Virus record (IMG/VR): IMGVR_UViG_3300032245_001746
Coordinates: 248,001-312,000 of that record
DNA: 64,000 nt
Strand: one strand, 5' to 3'
The translations under genes and the position numbers were made by a program. The stretch's first letter is position 1, and every line of letters begins with the position of its first letter. The notes under the pieces were generated by a model. It did not search any database, was not told the DNA's origin, and was given only the letters and a program-made list of their open reading frames with translations. Shown in pieces: positions 38,841-58,332 of the stretch.

Positions 38841-38898
38841 GTTTTTTCCTTTGGTAACATCATCACATTGTACAATCAAACTTATATAAGTGTTTATG

Positions 38899-38937: not shown

Positions 38938-39013
38938 ATTTATTTATTTAGAAATTCATAAGTAGCTACTGGTTCACACATTTAATTAGTCAGGGCTTTA
39001 GCTAACTAATCTT

Positions 39014-39184
39014 TTAAAAATGTGCGAGCCAACTAGATCGTGAACTCTTAGACCAACGAAAAATTGCGAATTTTCGTTGTACTAGACTATATTTTTCAAT
39101 AGCCGTCCAGATTTTATTAAAAACAAAAGAGGGTTTTTCAACAAAACAGAGAATTACAATCAACATAATGAATATATTGAACAT
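39014..39184 (-). CDS. 56-aa membrane-anchored peptide (not in ORF track), paralog 2
   Basis: MFNIFIMLIVILCFVEKPSFVFNKIWTAIEKYSLVQRKFAIFRWSKSSRSSWLAHF; AAGGAG RBS. Confidence 0.7.
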   Translation of the reverse strand: MFNIFIMLIVILCFVEKPSFVFNKIWTAIEKYSLVQRKFAIFRWSKSSRSSWLAHF

Positions 39185-40758
39185 GATTTTCTCCTTACAT
39201 AAGAAATTTCTTATTCTTATGTGTAAAAATTATGTAAGACTAAATCGGGATGGATCAGGACATGTCCTTCTTATTTTTTATTAATCAAATAATTATTAAT
39301 TATTAATTAAAAAATTAATAATTAATAATTTGGCGCACATGGATTTGATTTAAAATCCTGATGAAATGAGATCAGAGTTTGGTTTATTTGGTTTAAGTAC
39401 AATATCTGAGTCGATATCGTTAATAACTGTTGAATTTTTTGGATTTAGTTTCATTTTTCACATTTTTCTTTATTCAGTTGATTTTTTACTGTGAAGATTT
39501 GTTGTACAACAAGAATCATTGCTTCGTGAGCATCTTCTTGAAAATCAAAAACTATTGAAGAGAACGAGACATTTTTGAATTTCAGAGTGAATCTGAATTT
39601 AGATGAATCTTTATACAGATATGATTGATTAAGTTCAATCATATCTGTAACTTGCATAATATGATTTGTGTATGGAATTCTGACCATACTTTCCATTGGA
39701 TTTTTTTCATCATGAAGAAACTTCAGTGTTTCAACACTTTTTGGTTTTTCAGCAATTGAAATAACATCATCATGAAGAGAATAGGTTCCATTTTCAAGAG
39801 ATTTGAGTGTATTTTGAGAAATATTGTTTAAATTCATTAGAAGTTGAATTAGGCTAAGAGCCTGATCCAGTTCAATTGGTTCTGAGTAGAAATCAGCCAG
39901 ATTATTTCCTGTATAAACATGTACATTATATTTTCCGGGTTCAACAAGACTTGATGAGTAGTCAATTTTGGTAATTTCTTGTAATTTAGAAATTACGATT
40001 GAGGTATTAACCTTTGGAAAGGTTAGAAAGTTTCCAGTTTTGGCAAAAGTGGCGATAGTTGTCATTGTTAATAATTTCTTGAAATTGAAAGGAGTTGATA
40101 TCGTTGTATTGTACAATCAAACTTGGTTTTACTTTTTCATTTGATTGAGATCATCAATAAAGCTTTGTATCATAGCGTATACAACCCAGATTGGACCGAG
40201 AAGTGTAGGAATGATATCTTTTCCAAGAAAAGCGAGAGCCATTGAAAATGCGAGCCAGAACAATCCGATGAAATACAGTATATCGATCATGAAATGATAC
40301 CTCCGTTATTAATTCCCAGTTCATTTTGAATTTTTCTCAATTTACTTTTTTCACCTTCTTGAAAGGAAAGAAGGTGTCTCATTTCTTGAAAATCGGATAA
40401 GAAATTTCGAATTTGTTGTCCATTCATATTTTTGAATGTAGATTCTAAAATAAGATCTGGTGTATTTCTTTTTTCTGACAATCCAAGAATTTCAATTACG
40501 AGATTTTGGTTTGTTACCATAAAAACGCAATTTGTTGCTCTTTCGTTCATGGAAAAGAGTTTAATTTTTTGGTTATCAACATGAGTTTGTCCAAAAAAGA
40601 TGGATGTTGTATCTGATTCGAAATATGGATTTCCGGACCAATTTTTGACTTTTGGACCGAGCCACACAGTAATGGAGGTTGCATTATTTTGAATTGTTAT
40701 TTCCACAGTAAAACTCCAGAATTTAGTTTATTTGGATTAACATGTTTACATTGTACAA

Positions 40759-41319
40759 TCAAACTTTGTGATCATTTTGAATAATTTCGTCATATTGTAT
40801 TAAGCAACCATTTGAATCTTCAATAAAGATCAGGTTATTATTTTGATCATATTTGCGTTTTTCCCACCAACCATTTGAATCTTCAATAAAGATCAGATTA
40901 TTATTTTGATCATAATCATATTTTACTGAATAATCATTTGAATTTTTATAAAGAATTAGATTATTATTTTGATCATATTTGTGTTTCATGTGAAACGAGT
41001 ATGATCGTTTAATCGTCAGTTCGTTATTAACAATTCCAAATAGTTGATAATATTCTTCTTTTGGAATTTCTCTGATGACACGTAGTTTATTTGTTACAGA
41101 TTTATCACAAGAATGGATACATTCGCCTAAATCTTCAATTTCGAGTAATTTGAAATTATGTTGAATTGAATAATGGTTCAATACGTTAATTGGATTTTTA
41201 CAATAGTGGAATCCATATTTGCACATAACTGGAGTTCTTGGTAATTCGTAGGTTTTTCCGATTTCGAATTTATGATTTAGACAAATGAAATCATAGGTTG
41301 CTTTGAATCCGGTTTTCAT
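40759..41319 (-). CDS. Family B (DUF7666-like + YD-like repeats)
   Basis: MKTGFKATYDF..GFHYC; C-terminal ~21-aa repeats YDQNNNLIFIEDSNG. Confidence 0.8.
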   Translation of the reverse strand: MKTGFKATYDFICLNHKFEIGKTYELPRTPVMCKYGFHYCKNPINVLNHYSIQHNFKLLEIEDLGECIHSCDKSVTNKLRVIREIPKEEYYQLFGIVNNELTIKRSYSFHMKHKYDQNNNLILYKNSNDYSVKYDYDQNNNLIFIEDSNGWWEKRKYDQNNNLIFIEDSNGCLIQYDEIIQNDHKV

Positions 41320-41346
41320 TTGTTACTTTCCTTTATTTGTTAATAA

Positions 41347-41862
41347 CTATTTTTGACCAAATTTGGCATCGATTAACTTATTATTTTGATCATATTCATA
41401 TTTTGACCACAAGCCATTTGCGGATTCACAATAAGTTTCATTATTATTTTCATTAAATTCGTATTTGGTCCAATCACCAAATGAATCTTCATAACGAATA
41501 CGATTATTATTTTCATCAAATGTTTGTTTTGTCCAATAACCAGCTTCATAATTAGTTGTCAATTGATTGTTAATAATTCCAAATAGTTGATAATATTCTT
41601 CTTTTGGAATTTCTCTGATGACACGTAGTTTATTTGTTACAGATTTATCGTATTTGGTGATTGATATGCCAAGATCTTCAATTTCGAGCAAACGAAAAGT
41701 GTGTTTAATTGGATAATAACCAAGAACATCGATTGGATTTTTACAATAATGAAATCCATATTTACAAGGAATTGGAGTTCCTGATAATTCGTAGGTTTTT
41801 CCGATTTCGAATTTATGATTTCTGCAAGAGAAATCGTAGGTTGCTTTGAGTCCAGTTTTCAT
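41347..41862 (-). CDS. Family B protein
   Basis: Same domain and repeats. Confidence 0.8.
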   Translation of the reverse strand: MKTGLKATYDFSCRNHKFEIGKTYELSGTPIPCKYGFHYCKNPIDVLGYYPIKHTFRLLEIEDLGISITKYDKSVTNKLRVIREIPKEEYYQLFGIINNQLTTNYEAGYWTKQTFDENNNRIRYEDSFGDWTKYEFNENNNETYCESANGLWSKYEYDQNNKLIDAKFGQK

Positions 41863-41865
41863 TTG

Positions 41866-42396
41866 TTACTTTCTATCTTTTTGTTTGTGATAAGAGAAAT
41901 AACTAGTTACATTGTTATTTTGATCATATGTACGAATTGAATGATAACCAGATGAATCTTCAATATATGTTAGATTATTTCTTTCATCATATTCATATTT
42001 TAGCCAAGCACCATATGAGTTTTCAAGATAAATCAGATTATTATTTTGATCATATTTGTGTTTTACCCAAATACCATTTAGTCCATTAATAGTCAGTTCA
42101 TTATTAATCATACCAAATAATTCATAATATTCTTCTTTTGGAATTTCTCTTACAACACGTAATTTATTTGTTGCAATTTTATCTTCATGATAGATTGATA
42201 TGCCAATATCTTCAATTTCCAATAGATGGAAATCATTTTGAATTGGATAATATCCAAGAACATCAATTGGTTTGACGCAATAATGAAAACCATATTCGCA
42301 AGGAATTGGAGTTCCTGGTAATTCATAGGTTTTTCCGATTTCGAATTTGTGATCTCTGCAATAGAAATCGCGTGTAGCTTTGAATCCGATTTTCAT
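41866..42396 (-). CDS. Family B protein
   Basis: MKIGFKATRDF...; same repeats. Confidence 0.8.
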   Translation of the reverse strand: MKIGFKATRDFYCRDHKFEIGKTYELPGTPIPCEYGFHYCVKPIDVLGYYPIQNDFHLLEIEDIGISIYHEDKIATNKLRVVREIPKEEYYELFGMINNELTINGLNGIWVKHKYDQNNNLIYLENSYGAWLKYEYDERNNLTYIEDSSGYHSIRTYDQNNNVTSYFSYHKQKDRK

Positions 42397-42975
42397 GATT
42401 TTTTCTTTACTGCATTTAGACAATGGTGGAAATTATTTGCATCACAGCGTTTATTTGGATTCGGATAATATTTTTCGAACCAATTTTCAATCATTTTATG
42501 ATCAATGAGTTCTGATGTTGGATTCCAAAAACAAACGACACAACCGTCTAAAATGCACCAATTAAGGGAGATACAAACTGATCTATCGTCATATTTTCCT
42601 ACAGTTATTAGGAATCCATTAATTTGGTCCCAATTTTCAATTTCTGGATATTGGCAATAACTGCTTTTTTTGCAAAATTTTGACCATAATTCATGGTAAG
42701 CAAAATCATCTGCTTCAACAAGAAATTGTGTAACAGCAATACGACTTTCTGGGTTATTATATTTTTCAAAAAATTCGCGATTCATAATTTTCCCTTTAAA
42801 TCGAATTTAGTTGCAAGATTGAATTTCGAAATATGAAGAGCAGCAATCGCAACCTGGTTCAATTCTTACAACTTGTACTTTTCTGAGTTTAGATCTTTTT
42901 GATCCATGAGGTTTATAGGATTGGACGAATTTTTTTCTTCCGAATTTTTCCAGAGCATCCCAGGGATGATCAATT

Positions 42976-43098
42976 TTAGAAATTGGAAGATTTTTTGGAT
43001 TTACAGCACCTGGAATTCCGTAGTCGATAAGTTTTACCAATTTCAAACTTATAACCTCGGCACACGAAATTATAAGTGGCTTTAAATCCTGTTTTCAT
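42976..43098 (-). pseudogene. Truncated family B 5' fragment fused out of frame to a different gene
   Basis: MKTGFKATYNFVCRGYKFEIGKTY then unrelated sequence overlapping ORF 42807-43046. Confidence 0.75.
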
Positions 43099-43567
43099 TT
43101 GAAATGCTTTCATGTTTAGGCAGCTTTTTGCTCATAAGAGCAAGTTAGACAATATTTATTGTCATTAATAGATATTGTCCAGTCAACACCAACTTTGTTA
43201 TTTCTTGGAGAAAAGAAACAAACTGAATCTGTCAAATGGTTGTCATTAATTCCAGCGTGAATTAATAATCCTTTTAGAGTTCTTGGACCTTGACCAAAAT
43301 AACCCCAACAAACGCCATCGAAAATGCAAAATCCATTTTCTCCAACGAATTTAACTCTTTCATGAAAGTTAGAATAAGTTACACCATTAGATGTTCTTTT
43401 GCTATACCATCGGTATCCAATAATTTCATGAATTTTTCCGAGACGATCAATATGTTTTGGAGCATTTTCTTCAACTTTTGAAGAAGATCCATATTCGTAG
43501 CGATATTTAACCATTATTAAATACTCCAAAAACACAATAAAAGTGAAGACGTATTTATATTGTACAA

Positions 43568-43591
43568 TCAAACTTTGAATCCAGTTTTCAT
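43568..43591 (-). pseudogene. Family B start (MKTGFK) cut off at the element
   Basis: ATG AAA ACT GGA TTC AAA G|TT TGA: six family B codons run directly into element 43559. Confidence 0.7.
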
Positions 43592-43616
43592 GATGTATTT
43601 TCTTTGTTTGATTATA

Positions 43617-44189
43617 CTATAGATCAGTAAAAACTATTCCATCAGGATTAATTTTCAAGTTTGCCAGATTTGATGATGGATGTTTGAAATAAAACATTTC
43701 CCACAAATTATTGTTAAACACTAATTTCATGATTAGTTCTTTATTTTCATTATAGAAATATTCTTGGCATGGTTTTCCTTCGTAAAAAACTTTACGATTT
43801 AAGATATTTCCGTTTTCAAAATAAATTGAGATTTCCATTATCTCAATTTCATTTCGAATAATAAGTGTTCGATTTGATGAATCATAAGAAAAATTTCTTC
43901 CCAATAGATTCATGATTTCATCAGGATTAGTTATTTCTCTTACAATTCGAATGTGATTAGAAAAAGAATAAGATTGATAATGTTCAGTAACTTTGGATAA
44001 GTCTTCGATTTGTAACAATTTAAATGTTGGACAAATCGAGACATAATTAAACATATCTTTTGGATTACGAAAATAAAGTAATCCATTTTTAAATCGTTCA
44101 ATTTTACCTGATACTTGATATTCTTTTCCAATTGACCATTTTGATTCAAAACATTCTTCATTTACTGTTGCTAAATAACCTTTTGACAT
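43617..44189 (-). CDS. Divergent family B protein
   Basis: KGYLAT, FKLLQIEDL, NHIRIVREI. Confidence 0.6.
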   Translation of the reverse strand: MSKGYLATVNEECFESKWSIGKEYQVSGKIERFKNGLLYFRNPKDMFNYVSICPTFKLLQIEDLSKVTEHYQSYSFSNHIRIVREITNPDEIMNLLGRNFSYDSSNRTLIIRNEIEIMEISIYFENGNILNRKVFYEGKPCQEYFYNENKELIMKLVFNNNLWEMFYFKHPSSNLANLKINPDGIVFTDL

Positions 44190-44218
44190 AATTTTCTCAG
44201 TTTGAAAAATTTTGTTGA

Positions 44219-44752
44219 TTACATTTTCCTATTAATGCCATTTAAAGCATCTTGCCAATAAGAAAGTGAGGTGGTTAATCTTTTGTTTTCTGTAGAACAG
44301 ATTAATTTGTTTAGAAAATCAAACAATTTTTGAGCAAGTTTTTCTTGACCAAGAATTGTAGCAGAAGCTAAAAATCTTGTAATTCTTAGTGAATTGTGAT
44401 TAAATTCTGCCCATGTGTATAATTGTTTATCCAAATTTGGAAGAATTTGAATGTTGTCATTTTCAAATGAAAGACCAAGAAATTTCAAAAATCTTTTTGA
44501 TGCTTTTTCGAAATTTCGAATTAATTCAAGATCTGTTCGAAATAGTTCGATAGTTTCTCGATCTAACAATGGAGCATCTTTATTAAAAGCGCTTGCTTTT
44601 TCTAAAGGAAAAATAACTTGAATGAAGTTATGGCATTCTTCGAACCAATCATCATTTTGATTCAAAACTTGATCAAAAGTTAAGTTGTAAACTTGTTCAT
44701 TTTTATAAAATGAAATCAATCTTTTATTCAAGCTATTCTCCTTTTTCTTCAA
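44219..44752 (-). CDS. Opioid growth factor receptor (OGFr)-like conserved domain protein
   Basis: HNFIQVIFPL..S.FN..APLL and NHNSLRITRFL. Confidence 0.75.
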   Translation of the reverse strand: MKKKENSLNKRLISFYKNEQVYNLTFDQVLNQNDDWFEECHNFIQVIFPLEKASAFNKDAPLLDRETIELFRTDLELIRNFEKASKRFLKFLGLSFENDNIQILPNLDKQLYTWAEFNHNSLRITRFLASATILGQEKLAQKLFDFLNKLICSTENKRLTTSLSYWQDALNGINRKM

Positions 44753-47343
44753 TACATGAGTTCTTCATTTTTTTCTTCTTCTGCAAATTTAGATAAGCAT
44801 CTAGGGCAATCTGCATGTGCTTTAATATGCAAAGAATCAATAATTGAACAAATTTGTTCAATTATTGATTCTTCAACGCCTTCTTTTTCCAATATTGCCC
44901 AAGCTTTTTCTGCATCGGGACTCATTACATTATCTTCTGGTGGACCAGAGCAACCGGGAGGATATGACCAGCCAAACATTCCTGACATTTTTAATATTCC
45001 TGTTTTTTAGTAAAGTTTTTCAATTTCTCTGTATACTCCAGTAATAATGTTATTGTTTTTCAATTTCAAACTGTCATGAACTAGATCAGCAAGTTCTTTT
45101 GTTTCAAACTTCAAAACAATTGAATGAATTGCATTGCCAGATTTATGAGTCGTTGTTACGAAAATTTGATACATTGTTTGACTTTCTGAAAAGAGAGAAT
45201 ACTTGTATATCATTGGTAATTACTGTTGTAATGACCAACCATTCACTATAACAGCATAGTTACTTTACAAGTGTTGATTTTCGTGTCGTTTAATTTAGAC
45301 ACTGCTTTCTCAACACTAATAAGTGTGTTGAGTTTTGCCTGTTAGTTCACATTGTTAGTAGCATGTGGCTTTGATCGCCATGAAGGAATTTTCTTCATAG
45401 CAATTCCTTCATTCATTGCTTGGCGATCAAATTCATCCAGTACAATTGTTGCATTTGCTGGAATCGTTCCATATCCGCCACCAGAAGTTCTTGCAATTGG
45501 TTTACGTCTTACTGTATTACGATTGCGAGGCATCATTAATCTCCAAAGAATTATTGTTTAGAACCAACACTCACAGATTGTACAATCAAACTTCTGGACG
45601 GATTGTTGAAAACGATACTGGTATAATTTCCTGAAAACAAAGTATCCAATTTTCACTTATAGCTTGTTCAAGCACATCATAATGAACAAGTGCTTGTTCA
45701 GCTTCCGAAACCGTATTAAAAATAAAATCAAACGCAAATTCGTAAACTTCAGGATCGGAGTTTGGAACAATCAGTCTTTTATTTTTGCTTTCATCTTCAA
45801 CAAGAATTCGCCACACATAATTCTTTTCTGAACTTAATTCCATTATGTGGAATTCATTAATTTTTTTAAGCATGTTGTTTTTCTTAAAAAGTTGGAAGAA
45901 AAAAAAGACATAACACTTATGTCATCAATGATCAATTGTTAAGGAATGTTTTTCATAAGCTTCCAGACTTGTAATTCTACAAATCCAGATGCAATTCGTT
46001 TTTGTGTATCACGAAAAACATCAGGAAGCAAATTCAGCAATTGGAGAACCCATTCATTTTCTGAATGAACTTTTACAATAATTTCATTCTCTTCGAGAGG
46101 AATTTCTGGCACATTAACTGTAACCTTTCCCCAAGATTCAATTAATTGATTATCTTCAACAACATAAGCGATAATACACAATCGTTTAGATTGATGATAA
46201 AGATCGGTCTTCAACTCAATTTCAACATTTTCATTAAATGCTTTAATTGTTGTTCTCATTTTATGATCCAAAAAAGAAAGTTTTGTTTCAACATCAACAC
46301 ATTGTACAATCAAACTTAAAAAGCTTGAATGTTTTCAGAGTTATTATTTCTCCAATGAGCCAAGCAAAAATGTTGTTTTAATTCTGCATTATAACCAATT
46401 ACGGCACAAGGAGAATTTTCTTGAATATTGTTGGGATACAAAATCGCAACATATTCAAATGGATTATCTGTAGTGTGGAAATTAACAATTTCTCGTACAG
46501 TTTTTGGTAAAAGAACAAATGTTGTTGGAATATATTTTTCATCTTCTTCAATATGAAAGATAACTCCAGATCTGAAGTTTGAATACGTATTTTTGTAACA
46601 TGGAATTTTATAAACTCCAAATTCATTAATTGAGTGTTCTGTTAGAACAAAGTGTGGATTTACCAATGACCATTTTGGTAAACCATCATTATTCTTCATT
46701 GAGAGCAACAATTGCAAATTAATTAATTTGCCATTAAATTTTAGAACGCCACCACTACTTGCTTTTAACAAAGCAGCATATTGCATTTCAGCAATAGTTC
46801 CAGATTCAAGTTGATCAATTAATTTTTGATTAATTGATGCTTTGGTTTCTTCTGAAACCAAAGCATCAACAATTGGATTTTCTGAATTTTGCAGTGGATG
46901 TACAGATTTAGTATGACGCTTAAAGAGATTAAACATAAATTGCTTTACTTTCTTTATCAAAATTTATTTTAAGGTCAGTGAGACATTTGTACAAATTTTA
47001 CAACATTTTGTTGTGCAATATACAGAGAATACAAAAGTGTGAAATTGTGATCTCCATAACGGCAACGTGCAATAATTCTGTTTTCAGGAACTGTCAAAAC
47101 GGCTTCATTTAGTGCTTGTGGATGACGATATTTAACTTGTTCTACAACAGAAAGAACAAGTTCAACTTCACCAAATCCAACTACTTCTTTTTCATTTGAT
47201 GAAATGTGAAATCCAAGAATATTTCCATATCCAACAGGATTTTCCATTGAATTAACAAAGGCACATGGAATGAAATTTTCAGTCATTTTGTGATCCAAAA
47301 AAGAAAGTTTTGTTTTACATCATTACATCAACACATTGTACAA

Positions 47344-47856
47344 TCAAACTTTACTTACATATTTGCGGTCAATTTCATTATTGTTTTCATCAAATTTTTG
47401 CCAATAGCCATTCGAGTTTTCAAAATAAATTTCATTATTATTTTCATCATATTCGTATTTCATCCAATAATTATCTGAATCTTCATAACGAATACGATTA
47501 TTTCTTTCATCAAATGTTCGTTTTGCCCAATAACCAAATTCATCAGTAGTTGTTAATTGATTATTAACAATTCCAAACAAAGAATAATATTCTTCTTTTG
47601 GTACTTCTCTTACAATTCGGATTTTATTTGTTACTGTTTTATTTCCTTCGGTGATTGATTCACCCAAATCTTCAATTTCCAATAATCGAAAATTATGTTT
47701 AATTGGGTAATAACCAATAACATCAATTGGTTTGATGCAATAATGAAAACCATAATTGCAAGGAATTGGAGTTCCTGGTAATTCGTAAGTTTGACCAATT
47801 TCAAACTTATGATCTATACACATAAAATCGTAGGTAGCTTTAAATCCGGTTTTCAT
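47344..47856 (-). CDS. Family B protein
   Basis: Same domain and repeats; stop inside element 47335. Confidence 0.8.
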   Translation of the reverse strand: MKTGFKATYDFMCIDHKFEIGQTYELPGTPIPCNYGFHYCIKPIDVIGYYPIKHNFRLLEIEDLGESITEGNKTVTNKIRIVREVPKEEYYSLFGIVNNQLTTTDEFGYWAKRTFDERNNRIRYEDSDNYWMKYEYDENNNEIYFENSNGYWQKFDENNNEIDRKYVSKV

Positions 47857-48331
47857 TCTCTTTTAAGAGTTAAGTTCACAAGATAAAATCCATCTAGATT
47901 TTCATCAAAATTAGACGTATCCATTGGAATTGCATAAAATGTTGGAATATCGTTAATAACTTCGCCAATGCAAGCGAATGCAACTTTTCCATTAAAAATG
48001 GAAGGAATTGTTGCAGAAAAACCATTTCCACCATCTTTATCAGATCTTACATACAAATGATTTTTGTATGAAATCAATTTATTACATGGAACGTCTTTGC
48101 ACAACATTATTGTAATTTACCTTTAAAGAATCTTGAAAAGATAATTTTGGTTACTTTTTTAGAACCAGAATTATAAGAATCACCAAAAATGGATTTTCCC
48201 CAAAATTTGTTTTCTTTAATGCTACTTGGACAGACAGTGAGCATTTCTCCATTATGCTCAACTGTATCTCCAATTACAATTTCATTAATGTTAACTTGTT
48301 TTTTAATCATTTTTGATCTTATCAGTAATTT

Positions 48332-48928
48332 TCAATTAACCCAAATTTGGTTATTTACTACATGAACAACACAAGGAACTTTGCCTTTTACGCCTGTTTC
48401 TGTTTCTGTAACAAATGATCTTTCGCCCACAGAAAATTTTACTTCAAAGCTTGACCAAACTCCAGGATATTTTCCGTCTGGAATAGGATTTGGATTGGTT
48501 TCTACAAATTCTCTTGTGTTTACGCATTTTTTCATTTGTTTATTTCCTTTATGGAGATTGACAATCAAACTAAAACTTGGATAAATTTTAAGTAATCTTT
48601 CTTTCCGCCAATCAGGTTTTTCATTATACCAAATACAAATGTATTCTTTTGTAGCGTTATCAATTTCAATATTTCTGTGATACGGACGTTCAATTCCTGT
48701 ATCGCCATTGCAATAATTAATAAGCTTGTACCCGCATTTTTTCAATTGATTAGCAATTGAATCCCAGTAAATTCCATTAATTACTCGAACGGATCTGTAA
48801 TCTGAATAACGGCATAATTCAAGTTCCATAATGAAATTAGGCAGTTCGGCAATTTGCCATTTTTCTTCTCGACCCCAATAAACATTACAACTTTCTAGTA
48901 GAAACGAATCACTATCAATTTTGAACAT
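48332..48928 (-). CDS. Fusion of two cassettes through a mutated element
   Basis: Internal AGTTTGATTGTCAAT (one A missing), then AAGGA RBS and internal ATG (MKKCVN). Confidence 0.65.
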   Translation of the reverse strand: MFKIDSDSFLLESCNVYWGREEKWQIAELPNFIMELELCRYSDYRSVRVINGIYWDSIANQLKKCGYKLINYCNGDTGIERPYHRNIEIDNATKEYICIWYNEKPDWRKERLLKIYPSFSLIVNLHKGNKQMKKCVNTREFVETNPNPIPDGKYPGVWSSFEVKFSVGERSFVTETETGVKGKVPCVVHVVNNQIWVN

Positions 48929-48947
48929 TTTTAATATTCCTAAAAAG

Positions 48948-49020
48948 TGGTGCGGGTGGGAATTGAACCCACGACCAATAGATTAAAAGTCTAGTGCTCT
49001 ACCAACTGAGCTACCACACC
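48948..49020 (-). tRNA. tRNA-Lys(UUU), second copy
   Basis: GGTGTGG/CCGCACC acceptor, CTTTTAA loop, GTTCAATTC. Confidence 0.93.
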
Positions 49021-49026
49021 ATTTAT

Positions 49027-49278
49027 TTACTTAATATTAGCAATTGCTTTCAATTCTTTTTTCAATCGTTTAGCTGAATCACCACGAAATGATGATGCGT
49101 TACTCAAAAAATACAAAATAATAGATTTTGCACTATCCATTAGATAGTTATCATTAATTGAATTCAGTGAAAACATTGCCGAAAGATATGGTGCGGCAGC
49201 GAAATTGACATTTTTCCATTCTTTTTGAATTTCGCGTGCAACTTCACAAATTGGACGTGTTGAAATTACTTCAGCCAT
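49027..49278 (-). CDS. Conserved hypothetical phage protein
   Basis: RPICEVAREIQKEW..AAPYLSAM..SIILYFLSNASSFRG resembles a small phage protein family; function unknown. Confidence 0.55.
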   Translation of the reverse strand: MAEVISTRPICEVAREIQKEWKNVNFAAAPYLSAMFSLNSINDNYLMDSAKSIILYFLSNASSFRGDSAKRLKKELKAIANIK

Positions 49279-52200
49279 TGCGGAAATCCTTTTTAATTTT
49301 TTTAAGTTATCACTAACTAACATTGTACAATCAAACTTAAACAAGTAATTATTTATTGTTTAATACTGTTTGAATATATCTTTTTGCATCGTCATAAGAC
49401 CAAGCATGAATAAGATGTTTTTCTTTTGTAACATCTTCATTTGGGAATATCTGTCTGGCATCTGGTGGATTAGATATATTTTCCCATTCAATTGAAATAA
49501 CTCTTTTTCTCCATCCAATAACAAAATATCCTCTTGGTGTTTTTACTTTAATCCAAGGCGAACTTAGATAAACTGGATGGTTTGAATATTGGTTTGGCAT
49601 TTCTTGAAAAGAAATGTATTCAGAAAAACATTCCAGTAAGTTTTGAATTACTTGTTTTTTCTGAATTTCTACATTTGGATCTTTTGCTTTTTCTGATCTC
49701 AATAATTCTTCTACAATTTGAGAACAATGTTGTGAAATACGATTTTGTTGTTCGTCATTAAATTCTTCAATCCCTGCCACATCAATTTTAACAGAGATAT
49801 TCATTCCCATAGTACATACTGAATGAATAGCAACATTTTTAAAATTTTTATTAAACATTTAATTTTCTTTGTTAAATTTTAGAATTGTTTATTGAGCTTT
49901 TGGAATTGGACCTTTTCCTTCGATCCATTGTTCTAATTCTTCGACAGTAAACCATCCGTAATTATTTTTATTTTGATTAATTGGATTTAGCCAGAATACA
50001 ACATCATATTTTGATGTTTGATTTTTCTTCCATGCTGGTGATAGAGCATAGTATGGTTTAAAAAAATCAGTTTTGATATTTTCACAAATTTTCTTTTCAA
50101 TACCTGTTTCTTCGGCAGTTTTAACAAGTTTAAGACAATCTTCGTCTGCTTCTTTCATTTCTGTTGCACTTTTTTCTGGAAAAGTATCAAGAAGTGCAAC
50201 GATTAATCCTGAATTGCGATAGGATCTTTTTCCTTCGGTTGAGCAATTACCTAGAAATACAGCGACATTATTTGACTTAATTGCTTCATGAATCATGCTC
50301 AATTTATTGATGTTTTCTTGACCTTTAACAAGGATACCGAAATCTTTTTCGGACCAAGCAGATGTGATAAAATCATTATCATTATTTTTTTTAGAATAAT
50401 ATTTCAGTTCGCTCGGAATAGAGTCAAACAATCCTTTATCACTATAATAAATTCGGTATCCTATCGTTAGGATAGCCATATTGTCTTTTTGTTCATAACG
50501 AAGAGAAGTTGGAACATTTCTTGCTGTTCTTGCTTCAATTCCAACAAGATTTTCGTGTTGAATTCCAAATGAATTTGTTAGAGTTTTAATGCCCCATTCA
50601 TGTTCTGCACAAAAATCAGCAGCCATGAAAATTCCATAGAAAACATTATTATCATCAACAACAAATTGTGTTTCACTACTACGTCGCATTGTATTTTTCC
50701 TTTGTTTGAACCTTATTGTACAATCAAACTACTTTTTTTCATTATTCATTATCAAAAATATTTCTTAGTGTTTCAATATCGAAAGGAACTACGCGATTTT
50801 CAACGTGAATTCCATATTCTGGACCCCAGCCCATATCTCTTTCTTCATTTGAGCACATGATATTTGCTACTTTGATTGCATCATCTTTATTATCTGCAAC
50901 AATTGGATCAAATGCACACATACTGGAATCTTCCAGAAATGTTTCCATTGAGATTGGACTATAATTACGAATAAAGTATCTGTAAATTGCATTTAAGTTG
51001 TAATAACATTCAGATCCATTTACTGGAACAACATTTGGCTCAAATGTTAGATTTTCTGCCGCTTGAACGTTTTTAACATAGAATTTTCCATTTACACATG
51101 GAATTACAATGACCGTATTATCTTTTGACATATTTTATCCTTTAGTAATCATAGAAATGAATAATACCAACCAAAACACAAATGTTGAAATAGCAACAGC
51201 TAATGTTTCAAATATTTGTCGATTTTTGCTAATTCGAACACTTGGTATATCACAAGTGATGCAAATTGCACAAAATGAAAAGATATACATCATGATAAAT
51301 ATAGCGATTTCTTCCATGATTTGTTATCTTTTAGAATAATTCTGATTGTTTGGATGCGTGAATATGGGTTTTGATTTTTGGATTTTTTGCTGAGTTCAAT
51401 ATAGTTTCAGCAATATTTTTAGCATGTTCGTGATTTGTAATTCCTTGAATATCTTCATTTAGAATGAATGTTGGAATTTGTCGAGTGATAGATCCATCTT
51501 CTGTTTCTTCGGTAACAGAAGCAGTAATTACATAAAACATTTTTTTTGTTTTCCGTTAAATTTTAGTTTAATTGATTCAGTTTAATACTATTGTACAATC
51601 AAACTTTGTAATATTATTGGTGTGCAAGAAACCAAATAATAATTCCGAAAAAGACAAACATTGCGATAAAATAAACAGCACAACCAGCAGCTTGCTGTGC
51701 ATTAATTGGTTCTTTTTCGCATTTTTCGCACAAAATGCCTAATGGACCATAATCGTTTGTTGCGAATTTACCACATCTTGTGCATGAATTTTTCATAAAT
51801 TATTTATTCCTTTTCATTAAAGAGGTGTCAGTCATGATCCCTGTAAATTTATCTCCAAAAGCATTACATTTTCGACAAACAAATGTAATTTGCAAACTAA
51901 TTCCAACTTTCACCAATTTGGATTATACTCATTTTCGCCTTCTCTTTCAACTATTTTAAGGTATCCAGCTTCTTTCAATCTTTGTGCCGATTTTCTTTCT
52001 GAGATATTTAAACTTGAAATACTTATGAAACATAAATTGTATGCTAGTTGTCTAAGTAACACTTTCATATTATGAATAATATCATTTGAAGAAGCAGCAG
52101 CAAATCCTTGCCACGCTGAAACAAATGATTTCCAATCCCACGTTGCATCATCGCCTTGACGAATAATCTCCAATACTTGGTCTCTATTGACTTTTTCTAC

Positions 52201-52779
52201 TTCATCAGTCAATAAATTTTTAAGAATCATTCCATCGGCAATTTTCAATTCATATTTTTGGTGCGTAAAATTCGTTTCAAAAACGATTGAACCAGTCATG
52301 AGACATGAAGTGGCACTATGAATTTTAATGTTACCAGTCATATTTGAATCCTTTTTGGATCATTGTACAATCAAACACTGACTATTATCTTGAGAACTTT
52401 GAACTTCTCTTAATAAGAAAAAATATTCATTGTCTTTATTGGAATCTTTATTTTTAAGAAACTTGTTGATTCCAAATATTTTTATTTTGTTTTTCTTTTT
52501 TAATTGAATTAAATTTTCGATAGTAATTTACCACTTCATCTCCGATACATACTGGAATTATGTAGAAAATTAAAGTGAGTAAAAAAAATATAATAGCACA
52601 AACCAAAACAACAAGTACACAAGAAGTAACTAGGTAAAATCCAATAATGGGATATTCAATTAAATCTGGAATTGAATCAAACTCTGGCATAATTGCCGAG
52701 TAATAATTCATTAACATTCCTAGCAAACCAAGAAAAACAATGAACACTGTCAGAATAATTGCTCCAATAGACCATGATT

Positions 52780-53181
52780 TCATTTTAATTTTCCTGACAA
52801 AAGTGTTTTAATTGCTTCACCCCAAGAATGACCTTCATCTTGTAGTTGCTGAACAACCAAAAAATGACTATCATATGTAATGATGTTATCAGATATGAGG
52901 TTTGTAAATAATCGAACCAAATTCATTTCAATGAATAATTCGTATTTATCATCCCAACCCATATTTTGGAGTGCTTGACCAAAGATACATCCTTTGCATC
53001 CTGGTCCTGTATCTGATCCGCGATTATAATAACACCGCCCAACACCACTGGTGTTATACACAAAATCAGGATTTTCCGTTCCTAATTTAATTACTTCTTG
53101 CTTTAGTGCATCAAAAAACGCATCAGCATTTTCGTTGTATTTTTTATAAACATCAATTAATTTCATGATTAATTGCTCCAT
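52780..53181 (-). CDS. Family A protein
   Basis: GCKGCIFGQALQNMGW. Confidence 0.8.
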   Translation of the reverse strand: MEQLIMKLIDVYKKYNENADAFFDALKQEVIKLGTENPDFVYNTSGVGRCYYNRGSDTGPGCKGCIFGQALQNMGWDDKYELFIEMNLVRLFTNLISDNIITYDSHFLVVQQLQDEGHSWGEAIKTLLSGKLK

Positions 53182-53570
53182 CTATTTAGTGGTTCAATTG
53201 CTTCTTGCCATGATTTTCCATGATCTTGATTAGTTTGAACTTCGCTCAAAATATTTAAGTATATACTGTTTTCTGTTTTTGAAACACAACCTTTTACGTT
53301 AGCATCTACGTCAAGAATGTAAGCGATAGAATCGCGACTTTCTAATTCATCTGAATCATTCCAACCCATATTTTGGAGTGCTTGACCAAAAATGCATCCT
53401 TTACTTTCTTTGCCACCTTCTGGACCTCGATTATAATAGCACTGACCAATGCTATTTGAATTGTAAATAAAATCGGGATTTTCAACAGCAAGTGTTTGAA
53501 CTTTTTCTTTAATCTTTGTAAGAAAAGAAAGATCAGATTCAAATTGACTACGAATTTCAGCAAGTTTCAT
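53169..53570 (-). CDS. Family A protein
   Basis: SKGCIFGQALQNMGW. Confidence 0.8.
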   Translation of the reverse strand: MKLAEIRSQFESDLSFLTKIKEKVQTLAVENPDFIYNSNSIGQCYYNRGPEGGKESKGCIFGQALQNMGWNDSDELESRDSIAYILDVDANVKGCVSKTENSIYLNILSEVQTNQDHGKSWQEAIEPLNRWSN

Positions 53571-53945
53571 ATTTGTTTTTCCTTTATTGTATCATTGTGC
53601 AATCAAACTTAGATTTCTTACTTCAAGTTAAGGCATTTTCGAAAAATGGAGTATTAATCCATTTTAAATATTCAGCACAGCCGAAAAGTTCTTGAGATAC
53701 CATGCCAATTCCAGATTGCCAAACTTGAAATTTTACAACAGATTTACTGTCTTCAAAAAAGCTTGACCAAAAATCAATATCAGAAACAACTACTTCTTGA
53801 ACTTTTTGTCTATCACACAGCAATCGAATTGTGTACATTTTTATACCTAATAAAAAAAATTGTCACACCTGATAGCTCCATGCTACCTATGCTTTTTACA
53901 CCAAACTTAAATTAAAGTCCCACTCAACTTTAATTTAAGTTGTGA

Positions 53946-54320
53946 CTAAGTGGTTTCGAATAATGGCTGAATTGCTTTTCCCCAAGTAAATCCACTATCT
54001 TGATAAGCTTGAACAGTAATAAACGCACTATCTTCAGACATAAAGTCTGATCTAATCAGACTATTAAACAAATCATCAACAGTTGATTTATTTGCCAATT
54101 CATCTGGATCATTCCACCCCATATTTTGGAGGGCTTGACCAATAATACATCCTTTACATTCTGGACCATTTTCTACACCAGAATTGTAATGACACATTTG
54201 TTGATTAGGATTGTAAACAAAATCGGGATTTTCCGCTCCCAATTTAACTAGTTGATATCTGAATGAATCAAAAAATTCAACTTCATTTTTGTATTTTTTT
54301 ACAACATCATTTAATTTCAT
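53946..54320 (-). CDS. Family A protein
   Basis: ECKGCIIGQALQNMGW; start MKLNDV. Confidence 0.8.
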   Translation of the reverse strand: MKLNDVVKKYKNEVEFFDSFRYQLVKLGAENPDFVYNPNQQMCHYNSGVENGPECKGCIIGQALQNMGWNDPDELANKSTVDDLFNSLIRSDFMSEDSAFITVQAYQDSGFTWGKAIQPLFETT

Positions 54321-54362
54321 GTTTAAATCCCATTTAGAGGTTGATGACTCATCATTGTACAA

Positions 54363-54521
54363 TCAAACTTGATTTAGGTGTTTAATTGCATTTCCCCAAG
54401 AATGACCTGAATCTTGACTATTTTGAACTCTTGACAAAGACTGAATTATTTCGCTATAAATGCCATAATTGTGAAACATAGTTGTTACTCCAATTTGTTT
54501 TTTAAGTTCAATTAAATTCAT
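54363..54521 (-). pseudogene. Internally deleted family A remnant (52 aa)
   Basis: MNLIELKKQ...VQNSQDSGHSWGNAIKHLNQV; lacks the Cys core; ends at the element TGA. Confidence 0.65.
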
Positions 54522-54536
54522 GATTTAATCCTTTGA

Positions 54537-55082
54537 TTAGACTGGCAATTCAATACCCAGAAATTTAATTATTTCTGATAATTCAATAACGGCAGATGAT
54601 TTGAAATTATGTTTCAAAATCTGATTAATTCCCATATCATTTTTAAAATGAGCTAATTGTAATGCAAATAATCCTTGTGTTTCAGATAAAAAGTGTGGTG
54701 AATCAACAGAATCAGAAATAATATTTCTGATTTCTTGTTCGGAACTTTCGATTCTATATGAGTGAATATTTCTGGAATTTCCATCCGTTAAAGATACTAG
54801 ATGTTCAAATCTATGTTTTTGACAATGAAAATTAATTTCTTCAATTAATTCTCTTTGCAATGCATCAACGAGATTTTCGCCAGGATCAACATTTCCTCCT
54901 GGAAATCCCAAACAACCATCCCATCTTGTTAACATTAAAACCAGAGGAATATTAATTCCTCTTTGTTCTTTTTCAACATGAGTATAACTAACATATGGTT
55001 TTGCGTTTGGTGTGTAAATTACACCAAAAACCATTTGTCTCATATTTGGTTGAATTTCACATGGTTCTATTTTAGAGTACAT
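54537..55082 (-). CDS. Nudix hydrolase, NUDT16-like
   Basis: LMLTRWDGCLGFPGGNVD plus Nudix box GENLVDALQRELIEEI. Confidence 0.85.
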   Translation of the reverse strand: MYSKIEPCEIQPNMRQMVFGVIYTPNAKPYVSYTHVEKEQRGINIPLVLMLTRWDGCLGFPGGNVDPGENLVDALQRELIEEINFHCQKHRFEHLVSLTDGNSRNIHSYRIESSEQEIRNIISDSVDSPHFLSETQGLFALQLAHFKNDMGINQILKHNFKSSAVIELSEIIKFLGIELPV

Positions 55083-57048
55083 AAAAAACTTTCAATTATT
55101 TTTGACAAAAGATTCAGCAAATTCTTTTACTTTTTGATGTGTTGTTTGTAAAATTGGGTTAATTATTTGATATAAAGCTTCCAATTTTGGTGGACGTGTC
55201 CAAAGTTTATCTTCATGAAACATGATAATATAATCATTCTCATAAAATGCAATTTCAAATATTGCGTTTTCTTTTTCATATGGAAATCGATTGATTGGCA
55301 ATTCTACATTGCCATAAACAATTTTACCATCAATTAATTTAGCAATTACACAATACGCAATTCCGCTTTCTATGTTGGATATTCTTCCTGGATTCCATTG
55401 AGTTATTTTGGAGTTATTCCATTGTTTTGGAAAAGATAAATGTGGACCATTCCACCAATTTCTGTATGGTACAATTAATGGAAAAATTCCATAGAAATTA
55501 TTTGCTTCCATTACTGCTTGATAAAAATCATTTAGACACAGATAAGTTTCATCATTTTTATTATCGCACATATTCATTAGTTGTTCTGCTTTTTCAAGCA
55601 TTACAAAATGAATATGATAGCATATTAATGGATAATGAATTTCTGGATCAAATTTGATTTGAATCAATTTATGAAAAAGTTCATTTATATCTTTTCCAGA
55701 TTGATTTTTGCAGTAAATATTAATTATTTCTTCGATTTTCATCACAAATACCATGAAGCATTGAATGGTTGAGTAAGTTTCTCAGATTTAAACTTTTCAA
55801 TTCTTCTCAAGGTTTCAATATCTTTTAAAACAGATTCTACGTGGTTGTGAATTTGCAGATAGGCTTTTGTACTTAATGTGATATGACCATCTACAAATAA
55901 AGAACTATTTCCATTCAAAGAATGGTATAGAATTCTTTCTCCACCGTATTTTTGATTATCATTTTTGTAAAGATTAGAAGTTTGAACATCAAAATATTCT
56001 GAATGTGTTTTATCGTTTACTACGATTGTTTCATAATAAATAAATATTGCAGAACCTGCATCCATTCTGGAATGAGTCGACCATTCTTCGTATTCATGAA
56101 GATTTTCTCTATCAATTGGAATGCAACATAGAAATTTATGTTTAGTTCCTGGTTTTTTATCAAATGTTTCATAAGGTTCAAATTTGTAGTATGTTTGCAC
56201 ATAGAATTTGTTTAAAACAAACTCATCTTTAAACGCTTCAGACAAATAAAACATTACTTCTGCACACGTTCGAGTAAAATTACTTAATCGAACATCAATA
56301 ATTGGTTCAAGTTTTGCCTCTGTGATATTCATTTTTATCTCCAGTTGTTTTTAACAACATTGTACAATCAAACTTAATATTGTTTATTCTTGTTTTTCTA
56401 CAACAAAGAATTTATGATGTCCATTTGGATTTTCCTCAAGATATTGTTGTTCACAAAAATCTTTCCAATCATCACATTGTTGTTTTTCCTTTATTCCTCT
56501 GGACATTACTTTCCACAATTGTTGTTTATCTGTATGACTGTGCGTTCGAATTACATAAAACATTTTTACACCTGATTATTAACAAGCATATTTAACAACA
56601 CCATAAATAATTTGAATATCAAACCATTGTTTCATGTATTCAATTTCATCTTTGAATAAAGTTTCAAATTGATCTAAAGATTTTTGAATCTTTTCTGGAG
56701 TAATTTCAAATTTAAGATAATCATCACAAGAATCTATGAATGAAATTTCATTTTGAAATTTGTTTGGAAAGTAGAATTGTAATGATTTTTCTTTTGAAGC
56801 ATATTCAATGTGATGATTAGGTAACAAAAAATCATCTAAATGACCTTTTGGATAATCTTCTTCCCAAAAATCTGGAGTGTCAGATACGGTTTGTTTCACA
56901 TATCTTTGACTTTTACTTCTTCCACATTTTGGGCAAAAATTCGCATCTTTTGGAAAATTATGCTTTTCACACAAATCAGTTTCAACTTCTTTGATATTTA
57001 CTGTTGCGATAATATATGGACCAATATAAGTATATTTATCACTCATTT

Positions 57049-57507
57049 TCAAACACTTTCTAATAGATTTTCTACGCAATTACTCCAGGAGTTTCCAGAA
57101 TCTTGTAAATTTTGTGTTTCTCGAAAAGAAGATAATAAAACATCAATTTGGTCATCAACAAATTCTAGTTGAAAAACTCCAGCAAAATTTCTTAAAATAG
57201 TCTTAATATTGTAAGTCACATTCATTTGTTGTGAATCAGTCCAGCCCATATTTTGGAGTGCTTGACCAAAAATGCAGCCTTTACAATCTGGACCTACAAC
57301 TTCTTGAATTTTATTTTCTTTATCAACTGAAACAACTGGACCATTATATTTACATTTTGTTCTTATTTTTAACGCTTTATTTTGTTCATAGTTTGGATTA
57401 TAAACAAAATTTGGATTTTCACTTGCTAGTTTCAAAACTTGTTTTTTAAGTTCAATTAAAAAATCTTGATGTGATTCGAATTTATTAACAATTTGTTTTA
57501 AGTTCAT
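57049..57507 (-). CDS. Family A protein
   Basis: GPDCKGCIFGQALQNMGW. Confidence 0.8.
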   Translation of the reverse strand: MNLKQIVNKFESHQDFLIELKKQVLKLASENPNFVYNPNYEQNKALKIRTKCKYNGPVVSVDKENKIQEVVGPDCKGCIFGQALQNMGWTDSQQMNVTYNIKTILRNFAGVFQLEFVDDQIDVLLSSFRETQNLQDSGNSWSNCVENLLESV

Positions 57508-57891
57508 GAATGTTCCTCTAATTTTCCAATACAAAATCTTACAAATGACTGTTCTGTTTCATAGTCTAGAACCAATCCAGTAGTTTTATCAAATATCTTA
57601 CGATATTCTGGCGTTCCGTAGAAATCATCATAATATAGATTGTGAGAAGTTATTAGGTTCAGTTCAATTAGTGGCAATAAATGTTTTTCAAAAGAATATT
57701 CTTCTCCAACAAATTTTTCGAATTTTTCTTTTTCAATGTGAAATGGACGAACATATTCCACGAAACATTTTAGAGAAATTTTGTCTTCACCACTGATAAA
57801 ATCATTTGCGGCTTTTTCAATTTCTCCATCAGTAGTTTCTGATTCATAATAGAAACAGTTTCTTACCATCCAATTAAATAATTCATCTGGA

Positions 57892-58302
57892 TTAACCATT
57901 GTTTACTCTCAAAAGTTTAATGCAATCACCCCAAGATGGTCCAACATCTTGTGTTCTTTGAACTAAAAGAAGTTGTTCAGGCACTTTTAATTCTTCGCTA
58001 ACACAAGAATATAACAAATCTTCTATATCTACTCTTAACTTCATTTCTTTTTCATCATCCCACCCCATATTTTGTAGGGCTTGACCAAAAATACAACCCT
58101 TACATTCTGGACCTGTGATTTCATATTCTTGAGTTGAATTATTATAAACCTTTGCAGGACCGTTATAAAAGCATACTGATGCTGCTGAATTTGTATATTT
58201 AAAATCAGGTTTTTCTTTTCCAAGTTTAATGACTTCTTGAATTAAAGCTTTTACAAAATCATCACAAGATGGAAATTGACTGGCTATTTGTTGCAAATTC
58301 AT
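57892..58302 (-). CDS. Family A protein
   Basis: GPECKGCIFGQALQNMGW. Confidence 0.8.
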   Translation of the reverse strand: MNLQQIASQFPSCDDFVKALIQEVIKLGKEKPDFKYTNSAASVCFYNGPAKVYNNSTQEYEITGPECKGCIFGQALQNMGWDDEKEMKLRVDIEDLLYSCVSEELKVPEQLLLVQRTQDVGPSWGDCIKLLRVNNG

Positions 58303-58332
58303 TTTTTAATTCTTTATAAGTTTTTTAGTAAA

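What the first reader, a model, noticed from the sequence alone, without database searches (positions are those of the whole stretch)
48520..48580. A 1-nt deletion in the element fuses two cassettes into one ORF
Seen: inside ORF 48332-48928 is AGTTTGATTGT-CAAT followed by CTCCATAAAGGAAATAAACAAATG. Restoring the missing A gives ...S L I V Q S P stop, ending the upstream gene and leaving a normal RBS+ATG for the downstream one. Inference: decay of an element creates a new fusion protein and removes a promoter.
Basis: partly seen in the sequence, partly recalled or inferred. Interest (0 to 1): 0.6.

Follow-up and report, generated by a model that had tools for sequence, protein, structure and literature searches.

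The report
One-base deletion fuses two phage genes
In a huge-phage genome from a metagenome, losing one base from a repeated promoter-like signal between two small genes has joined them into one 198-residue reading frame; this is a real but ordinary mutation, seen so far in one sample only.

Summary
The window is part of a 28% GC huge-phage genome. One arm of it carries about 80 co-oriented copies of an invariant 17-nt element, AAGTTTGATTGTACAAT, each lying ahead of a small gene or a tRNA.

Inside ORF 48332-48928 (-) lies the only copy with a 1-nt deletion: the A of TACAAT is missing at 48557-48571. The deletion shifts the upstream frame past its TAA, and the frame runs on into the downstream ATG.

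- **Relatives.** The two halves have separate relatives of 125 aa (87% identity) and 67 aa (79% identity). On 13 metagenome contigs these are adjacent genes separated by the intact element, a stop, an RBS and an ATG. An exhaustive HMMER search of 1.84 billion proteins found no protein that spans both halves. The C half belongs to a family of stand-alone proteins of roughly 65-75 aa.
- **Assembly.** Raw reads were not available.

Three things are inferred and not shown: that the element is a promoter, that it is now dead, and that a fusion protein is made. Neither half has a known function. This is an ordinary frameshift fusion of modest interest.

The parts
48332..48928 (-). Fused ORF of 198 aa (stop codon included).
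   Evidence: The identical protein is present in a 530,789-bp ENA scaffold and in a Logan contig.
48557..48928 (-). N-terminal part. It is the ortholog of the stand-alone 125-aa protein P0001 (87% identity), whose reading frame runs through the element.
   Evidence: dN/dS against the relative is 0.23.
48557..48571 (-). Decayed copy of the repeated element, AGTTTGATTGT-CAAT. The A of TACAAT is missing between 48561 and 48560.
   Evidence: Alignment A1 shows the A present in all 12 contigs of the relative in that alignment.
48549..48551 (-). TAA that would end the upstream gene if the A were present. It is now out of frame.
   Evidence: Read from the sequence. The relative stops 3 nt earlier, at its own TAA.
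48543..48550 (-). Retained Shine-Dalgarno-like AAAGGAAA ahead of the internal ATG. It is now translated as part of the linker NLHKGNKQ.
   Evidence: The sequence is identical in the relative.
48332..48535 (-). C-terminal part, the former separate gene. It is the ortholog of the stand-alone 67-aa protein P0002 (79% identity) and a member of a family of small all-beta proteins.
   Evidence: AlphaFold2 pLDDT is about 96 over this part. dN/dS is 0.58.
49322..49338 (-). Nearest intact element upstream. It is presumably now the only promoter for the whole 49.3-47.35 kb stretch.
48947..49020 (-). tRNA-Lys(ttt), lying between that element and the fused ORF.
47344..48310 (-). Three downstream genes (67 aa, 84 aa and a 170-aa DUF7666-like protein). 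In the relative they follow the 67-aa gene, with no element copy found before them in L002, L003 or L001.
47335..47351 (-). Next intact element downstream.
13373..62606 (-). Array of about 75 co-oriented element copies within the window (about 80 in the genome). Each lies ahead of a small gene or a tRNA.

Best explanation
The window belongs to a huge phage assembled from a metagenome. The record is a 320-kb fragment; a 531-kb scaffold carries the same gene.

**The array.** An arm of about 57 kb is built of small-gene and tRNA cassettes that all point the same way. Each is headed by an invariant 17-nt element, AAGTTTGATTGTACAAT. I read this element as a compact promoter: a TACAAT -10-like hexamer inside a 10-bp palindrome, an invariant upstream extension, and no -35 box.

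**The ancestral state.** It is still seen in a relative about 7-12% diverged. A 125-aa gene reads through one such element and stops 1-4 nt after it. A 67-aa gene starts 16 nt further on, with its own RBS.

**The change.** In this lineage the A of TACAAT was lost. That single deletion has two effects:

- It shifts the upstream frame so that it misses the TAA and enters the downstream ATG in frame. The result is one ORF of 198 aa: the N domain, an 8-residue linker from the former intergenic DNA, and the C domain.
- It very probably cripples the promoter. The 67-aa gene and the three genes after it would then depend on read-through from the element at 49322-49338.

The internal RBS and ATG are untouched, so free C protein could still be made beside the fusion.

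**Shown:** the deletion, the fused frame, the separate orthologs, and the absence of fused homologs. **Inferred:** promoter function, promoter loss, and production and fitness effect of the fusion protein.
For: - **Site.** The sequence and the ORF are as described.
- **Element copies.** There are 72 exact copies, all on one strand; this copy is the only one with a 1-nt deletion.
- **Element logo.** 17 invariant positions, with no information at -35.
- **Position of the element.** It lies 15-60 nt ahead of an SD plus ATG. It lies 10-11 nt ahead of the mature 5' ends of tRNA-Lys 16553-16626 and tRNA-Leu 23921-24006, and of tRNA-Lys in the relative.
- **Separate relatives.** P0001 (125 aa) and P0002 (67 aa) are stand-alone. 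They are adjacent on 13 contigs from several studies, with the intact element between them.
- **No fused relatives.** The exhaustive search gave 34 hits, none spanning both halves; 32 distant relatives of the C half are 63-130 aa.
- **Assemblies.** The same protein is on a 530,789-bp ENA scaffold.
- **Structure model.** The C domain is confident and the linker is disordered in the AlphaFold2 model.
- **Terminators.** No terminator-like site was found on the minus strand between 49.3 and 47.35 kb.
Against: - No raw reads could be laid, only contigs, so a minority intact allele cannot be excluded.
- All records with the deletion may come from one sample.
- Nothing shows transcription starts. The element lacks a -35 box and is not picked out by a sigma-70 two-hexamer scan, so it might be an operator or an RNA-processing site instead.
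- Metatranscriptome contigs of the relative end at element positions. This fits a processing or termination role as well as a promoter.
- dN/dS of the C half (0.58) is higher than that of the N half (0.23) but within the range of neighbouring genes, so selection on the fusion cannot be judged.
Confidence: 0.85

Rival explanations
1. The missing A is a sequencing or assembly error, or a minority variant. The real phage population has two separate genes.
For: All records with the deletion (the IMG/VR record, an ENA scaffold and a Logan contig) may rest on one sample. Contigs drop rare variants, and raw reads were not available.
Against: An independent assembler gives the same sequence at k-mer depth about 35 with 0 differences. 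The site (GTACAA) is not a homopolymer.
Confidence: 0.07
2. The fused 198-aa gene is ancestral, and the relative split it by gaining an A.
For: With only two lineages, the comparison alone does not give the direction of change.
Against: The intact form matches an element consensus that is invariant in 72 other copies. An insertion would have had to create a perfect element, a stop codon and a correctly spaced RBS plus ATG all at once. All 32 distant relatives of the C half are short stand-alone proteins, and none carries the N half.
Confidence: 0.02
3. The deletion and the fusion are real, but the element is not a promoter. It could be an operator for a dimeric DNA-binding regulator, or an RNA processing or termination site that separates cassettes in a long transcript. 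What was lost would then be a regulatory or processing site, and transcription of the downstream genes would be unaffected.
For: The core ATTGTACAAT is a perfect palindrome. No -35 box is present. Sigma-70-type sites are not enriched. RNA contigs of the relative end at 48576 and at 49322/49338, next to element copies, and depth drops after the element. TGTACA palindromes are known operators of YefM-YoeB (PMC1802561, found); this is a resemblance only.
Against: The element sits 10-11 nt ahead of mature tRNA 5' ends and at a variable 15-60 nt ahead of start codons. It always points the way the genes point, and it contains a 5-of-6 match to TATAAT with the key A2 and T6. Contig ends cannot show RNA ends, as the tool itself cautions.
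Confidence: 0.2

Closest known systems
PeSL (promoter-early stem-loop) regulatory cassettes in the hyperplastic regions of T4-type phages (Arbiol et al. 2010, PMC2839356; Comeau et al. 2014, PMC4122927)
   Same: - Dozens of near-identical short regulatory motifs sit ahead of small ORFan genes in a variable genome region.
- The upstream gene's stop codon lies at or in the motif, and an SD plus ATG follows.
- Cassette gains and losses between close relatives occur next to the motifs. The relative has an extra DUF7666 gene next to the element copy at window 50715-50731, and the window has an extra 300-nt ORF behind the element at 49322-49338.
   Different: - PeSLs are sigma-70 promoters with -35 and -10 boxes plus a stable stem-loop terminator. 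Here there is no -35 conservation and no stem-loop.
- The conserved block here is one contiguous, invariant 17-mer.
- The phage is not T4-like: it has a DnaE-like polymerase whose best match is a 595-kb uncultured huge phage.
- Mini-circles were not tested.
Gene fusion by frameshift or stop-codon loss between adjacent co-oriented genes
   Same: One indel removes the stop from the frame and joins two formerly separate coding regions. The former intergenic spacer becomes the linker.
   Different: The indel lies inside a repeated regulatory element that overlaps the 3' end of the upstream gene. Coding and regulatory changes are therefore coupled in one mutation.
Compact promoters read by phage-specific transcription machinery (T4 late TATAAATA with gp55; contiguous T7-type promoters). 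This comparison rests on my own knowledge, not on a tool result.
   Same: A single short, highly conserved block without a -35 box, repeated many times in one phage.
   Different: No phage RNA polymerase was found in the 63%-complete record. Only a weak small sigma-like ORF was found. Which polymerase or sigma factor reads the element is unknown.

Membership tests
Frameshift/stop-loss gene fusion | Each half is homologous to a separate, complete gene in relatives. | tested here: met
   P0001 (125 aa, 87% identity) and P0002 (67 aa, 79% identity) are stand-alone. The 32 distant relatives of the C half are 63-130 aa.
Frameshift/stop-loss gene fusion | The separate genes are adjacent and co-oriented in relatives, and one mutation explains the join. 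| tested here: met
   13 contigs show the order 125-aa gene, 16-nt gap, 67-aa gene. In the 12-contig junction alignment the only indel at the junction is the single A.
Frameshift/stop-loss gene fusion | The mutation is real and not an assembly artefact. | tested here: inconclusive
   The independent Logan assembly of the probable source run is identical at depth about 35, and the same protein is on an ENA scaffold. All may rest on the same sample, and raw reads were not available.
Frameshift/stop-loss gene fusion | The fusion protein is produced. | not testable with these tools
   No RNA or proteome data exist for this strain. The RNA contigs belong to the relative.
PeSL regulatory cassettes (T4-type phages) | Sigma-70-like promoter with both -35 and -10 boxes. 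| tested here: not met
   A TACAAT -10-like hexamer is present, but information content is about 0 bits at the -35 position. The two-hexamer scan is not enriched: 105 sites against 90.6 +/- 9.6 in shuffles.
PeSL regulatory cassettes (T4-type phages) | Stable stem-loop that acts as a terminator or attenuator. | tested here: not met
   No terminator-like hairpins were found at the elements. The palindrome could give only 4 base pairs with a 2-nt loop.
PeSL regulatory cassettes (T4-type phages) | Many copies ahead of ORFans in a variable region, with indels between relatives at the motifs. | tested here: met
   About 80 copies in 57 kb. The neighbouring genes that were scanned have no named function. 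Cassette indels lie next to element copies.
Sigma-70-type bacterial promoter | Transcription starts 5-9 nt downstream of the -10 hexamer. | not testable with these tools
   Only contigs of RNA runs were available. Indirect support: the element lies 10-11 nt ahead of mature tRNA 5' ends.
Any Pfam / PHROG / PDB family for the two halves | Significant profile or fold match. | tested here: not met
   No Pfam or PHROG hits. Nothing significant in PDB sequences. Fold search gave no Foldseek match at E <= 0.001 and a best Z of 4.4. The Atlas search gave no usable hit.

The most novel reading that the evidence does not exclude
The invariant 17-nt element defines a previously undescribed, lineage-specific promoter or operator system of a huge phage of about 0.5 Mb. 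It has about 80 copies, no -35 box, and a -10 hexamer embedded in a palindrome. It doubles as the junction of gene cassettes: in one frame it supplies the stop codon of the upstream gene. Because coding ends and regulatory signals overlap, single-base changes in the element can weld neighbouring ORFans into new two-domain proteins. The 198-aa ORF would then be a caught-in-the-act example of how such phages build larger genes from cassettes.
Probability: 0.25. Interest if true: 0.55.

Novelty: new member of a known kind. Interest (0 to 1): 0.3.

Why it matters
It is a clean natural example, documented at a single base, of two ORFan genes becoming one reading frame. The ancestral state is preserved in a close relative. 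It also shows that coding and regulatory change are coupled when a promoter-like repeat overlaps a gene's 3' end.

The wider context may be the more useful lead. The array of about 80 invariant elements is a ready-made set of candidate promoters for an uncultured huge phage, and a candidate substrate for cassette shuffling.

The fusion itself is a one-off mutation seen in one sample, in proteins of unknown function, so its biological weight is small.

Tried and rejected
**Searches that found nothing**
- Pfam and PHROGs on the fusion and on each half gave no hits. The same libraries run on every member of the C-half family also gave nothing useful.
- A PDB sequence profile search gave nothing significant.
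- Fold search of the AlphaFold2 model: Foldseek against the PDB found nothing at E <= 0.001. VIA-align wide gave a best Z of 4.4, which is within noise.
- The ESM Atlas feature search gave no usable hit.
- The phage collection gave no match by megablast or by tblastn of the fused protein.
- tblastn of both halves against the phage's own genome found no paralogs.
- A literature search for the element core found only unrelated uses, such as the YefM-YoeB operator and primers.
- No multisubunit or T7-like RNA polymerase was found in the record. The record is only 63% complete, and the T7-like control rang nowhere, so absence is not shown.
- No other viral contig holds the deleted form.

**Readings considered and set aside**
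- A Bacteroidota-type -7 box (TAnnTTTG) in the 5' half of the element. I think it unlikely, because most cassettes have clear Shine-Dalgarno sequences, which that phylum rarely uses. That last point is my own knowledge.
- dN/dS as a test of selection on the fusion was uninformative: 0.23 and 0.58, against 0.21-1.03 for neighbouring genes.

**Not run**
- Complex prediction, because I make no claim that the two halves bind each other.

Full report
**What the window is**

The window is G000:C1:248001-312000 of a single 319,857-bp contig with 28.1% GC. The record is an IMG/VR virus record, classed as linear and estimated at 63% complete. A 530,789-bp ENA scaffold carries the same 198-aa gene, so the phage is probably about 0.5 Mb.

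Its large genes include a DnaE-like DNA polymerase and topoisomerase II subunits. The polymerase's best match among deposited phages is a 595-kb uncultured huge phage at 41% identity. No deposited phage matches the region studied here, by DNA or by protein.

**The element**

The 14-mer TTTGATTGTACAAT occurs 72 times exactly, always on the minus strand, between genome positions 261 and 318 kb. About 80 copies are found if one or two changes are allowed. In the window, allowing up to 2 mismatches gives 95 matches on both strands, against 4.3 +/- 2.2 in shuffles.

A position-by-position count over 76 copies gives these features:
- An essentially invariant 17-nt block, AAGTTTGATTGTACAAT.
- No information where a -35 box would lie.
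- A weak GAT(A/G)TC 6-11 nt downstream.

Copies point the same way as the genes and lie 15-60 nt ahead of a Shine-Dalgarno sequence and a start codon. They also lie 10-11 nt ahead of the mature 5' ends of tRNA-Lys 16553-16626 and tRNA-Leu 23921-24006. In the relative a copy lies ahead of tRNA-Lys in the same way. A signal that serves tRNAs as well as proteins acts on transcription or RNA, not on translation.

The last six bases, TACAAT, match the bacterial -10 consensus in five of six positions, including the second-position A and the final T. I therefore read the element as a compact promoter without a -35 box. It may be read with a phage factor: a weak, small sigma-like ORF exists at genome 121428-121952. 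This reading is inference, because no transcription start data exist.

A two-hexamer sigma-70 scan is not enriched in the region, and no terminator hairpins accompany the elements.

In one reading frame the element contains TGA. Many upstream genes use that TGA as their stop: 25 of the 36 copies with at least 40 open codons upstream have the stop inside the element.

The exact 17-mer is otherwise found in multiple copies on only one other IMG/VR contig (102 kb, 27-28% GC). Single matches elsewhere are at a level chance could give.

**The observation**

On the minus strand, 48571->48557 reads AGTTTGATTGTCAAT. This is the element with the A of TACAAT missing between 48561 and 48560. It is followed by CTCCATAAAGGAAATAAACAAATG, with the ATG at 48535-48533.

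It is the only copy in the genome with a one-base deletion. ORF 48332-48928 (198 aa) reads through it. With the A present the frame would read S L I V Q S P and stop at the TAA at 48551-48549. That would leave AAAGGAAA plus ATG as a normal start for a 67-aa gene.

**Test 1: are the halves separate genes elsewhere?**

Yes.
- The N part finds one relative, P0001: 125 aa, 87% identity, ending ...SLIVQS.
- The C part finds P0002: 67 aa, 79% identity over its full length.
- The look-ups listed 10 places for each protein, 13 different contigs in all. They come from ENA, JGI and Logan assemblies of several studies; the runs that hold the relative are wastewater and river metagenomes. Where both genes lie on a contig they are adjacent: the 125-aa gene, a 16-nt gap, then the 67-aa gene.
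- Twelve of these contigs were aligned across the junction, and all twelve are identical to each other there. The window differs by a few substitutions and by exactly one gap, the missing A. The relative reads AGTTTGATTGTACAATCTTAATAAAGGAAATAAACAAATG.
- An exhaustive HMMER search of 1.84 billion representative proteins with the full 198 aa gave 34 hits. P0001 covers residues 1-124, P0002 covers 132-198, and 32 distant proteins of 63-130 aa match only residues about 125-198. None spans both halves.
- The C part thus belongs to a family of small stand-alone proteins with the motif PDGxYxGxWSGY...GVRG...PC. The N part is known only from this phage lineage.
- The genome holds no paralogs of either half.

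The direction of change is clear. The intact state matches a consensus kept in 72 other copies. The fused state requires only the loss of one base.

**Test 2: is it an assembly error?**

The run that holds all sampled words of the stretch is the probable source (X1). Only Logan's contigs of it could be laid, not raw reads.
- A 5,436-nt contig of mean k-mer depth 35 lies on 47548-50500 with 0 differences and 0 gaps.
- The same protein is called on a 530,789-bp ENA scaffold from sample SAMEA4981813, which may or may not be the source sample.
- The site is not a homopolymer.

An error is therefore unlikely (about 7%). These assemblies may share their reads, and contigs hide minority variants. The other runs (wastewater, river, and a wastewater metatranscriptome) hold the relative, about 7% diverged over this stretch. 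The deleted form was not found on any other viral contig.

**Consequences (inferred)**

- *Coding.* The fusion consists of the N domain, the linker NLHKGNKQ (translated from the former stop-to-start spacer and RBS), and the C domain. In an AlphaFold2 model built on alignment A3, the C domain is confident (pLDDT about 96, all beta). Residues 117-128, at the end of the N part just before the linker, fall below pLDDT 50. The N part is poorly modelled because it has only one homolog.
- *Internal start.* The internal RBS and ATG are unchanged, so the free 67-aa protein may still be made by internal initiation.
- *Transcription.* In the relative, the element is followed by the 67-aa gene and at least three more genes (67 aa, 84 aa and a DUF7666 protein), with no element copy before them. 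If the deletion kills the promoter, these four genes in the window now depend on read-through from the element at 49322-49338, across an 83-aa ORF, tRNA-Lys and the N part. No terminator-like site lies on that strand in between.
- *Selection.* dN/dS against the relative is 0.23 for the N part and 0.58 for the C part, within the range of neighbouring genes (0.21-1.03). Nothing can be said about selection since the fusion.

**Function of the two proteins**

Unknown. There is no match in Pfam, PHROGs or PDB sequences, and no convincing fold or Atlas match. As short genes in a promoter-dense arm they resemble the early, host-directed ORFans of other large phages. That is an analogy, not a result.

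**Comparison with what is known**

The closest described system is the PeSL regulatory cassette of T4-type phages. PeSLs are many near-identical promoter motifs ahead of ORFans in hyperplastic regions, with gene gain and loss by recombination between them (PMC2839356, PMC4122927).

The array here behaves similarly. The relative has an extra DUF7666 gene next to the element copy at window 50715-50731. The window has an extra 300-nt ORF between the element at 49322-49338 and tRNA-Lys, where the relative has the element directly ahead of the tRNA.

It is not a PeSL by definition, because it has no -35 box and no stem-loop. The phage is also not T4-like. The fusion itself is an ordinary frameshift or stop-loss fusion.

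**Verdict**

It is a new instance of a known kind of event, of modest interest (0.3). The element array is the more interesting by-product.

Noticed in passing
window 13373-62606 (-); genome 261-318 kb: About 80 co-oriented copies of the invariant 17-mer AAGTTTGATTGTACAAT form a promoter-dense arm of small genes and tRNAs. The core ATTGTACAAT is a perfect palindrome, no -35 box is conserved, and a weak GAT(A/G)TC lies 6-11 nt downstream.
   Followed up: partly
window, many element copies, e.g. 47343, 45585, 40758, 35339: The TGA inside the element (AGTT-TGA-TTG) serves as the stop codon of the upstream gene at 25 of the 36 copies that have at least 40 open codons upstream. Coding ends and the regulatory motif overlap systematically.
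   Followed up: partly
window 50706-50744 versus L002:1770-2421: The relative carries an extra 211-aa DUF7666 gene just upstream of this element copy. Its own copy there has one mismatch (AAGTTTGACTGTACAAT). This is a cassette indel next to an element.
   Followed up: partly
window 49021-49322 versus L002:3832: The window has a 300-nt insert with an ORF of about 83-105 aa between the element and tRNA-Lys. In the relative, and at the second tRNA-Lys copy (16553-16626), the element lies 11 nt ahead of the tRNA. Contigs in X1 and X10 show a joint that skips these 300 nt.
   Followed up: partly
window 40800-43100 and 47344-47856: Several diverged paralogs of a DUF7666-like gene (phrog_14105) lie in the array. 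They cause many cross-matches and apparent joints when contigs are laid.
   Followed up: no
window 48576, 49322, 49338 (RNA run X10): Metatranscriptome contigs of the relative end next to element copies, and depth falls from about 14 to about 1 across the element at 48557-48571. This could reflect transcript boundaries or processing, but contigs cannot show RNA ends.
   Followed up: no
window 36940-36994 (-): Directly after an element copy, a 26-nt unit containing an RBS and ATG (GGCTATACAATCAAGGAAACAACAAT) is tandemly duplicated.
   Followed up: no
genome 18627-21260 (L014) and 33042-35528 (L015): The DnaE-like DNA polymerase appears to be split into two ORFs about 12 kb apart, matching phrog_405 positions 441-1050 and 85-406. 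Topoisomerase II genes lie between them. The second ORF also has a stretch similar to an anaerobic ribonucleotide reductase.
   Followed up: no
L029 (ENA scaffold, 530,789 bp): A much longer scaffold (ENA sample SAMEA4981813) carries the identical 198-aa gene. This suggests the 320-kb record is a fragment of a phage of about 0.53 Mb, consistent with CheckV's estimate of 63% completeness.
   Followed up: no
L032, L038, L041, L051, L053 (IMGVR_UViG_3300032245_001763, 102 kb): This is the only other IMG/VR contig with multiple exact copies of the 17-mer (at least 9; 27-28% GC), and is probably another member of this phage lineage. The held parts do not include the locus studied here.
   Followed up: partly
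window 30640-30653 (-): A second decayed-looking copy, AGTTTGATTGAAAT, two bases short. It lies just after the stop of ORF 30699-31109, so it is intergenic and fuses nothing.
   Followed up: no
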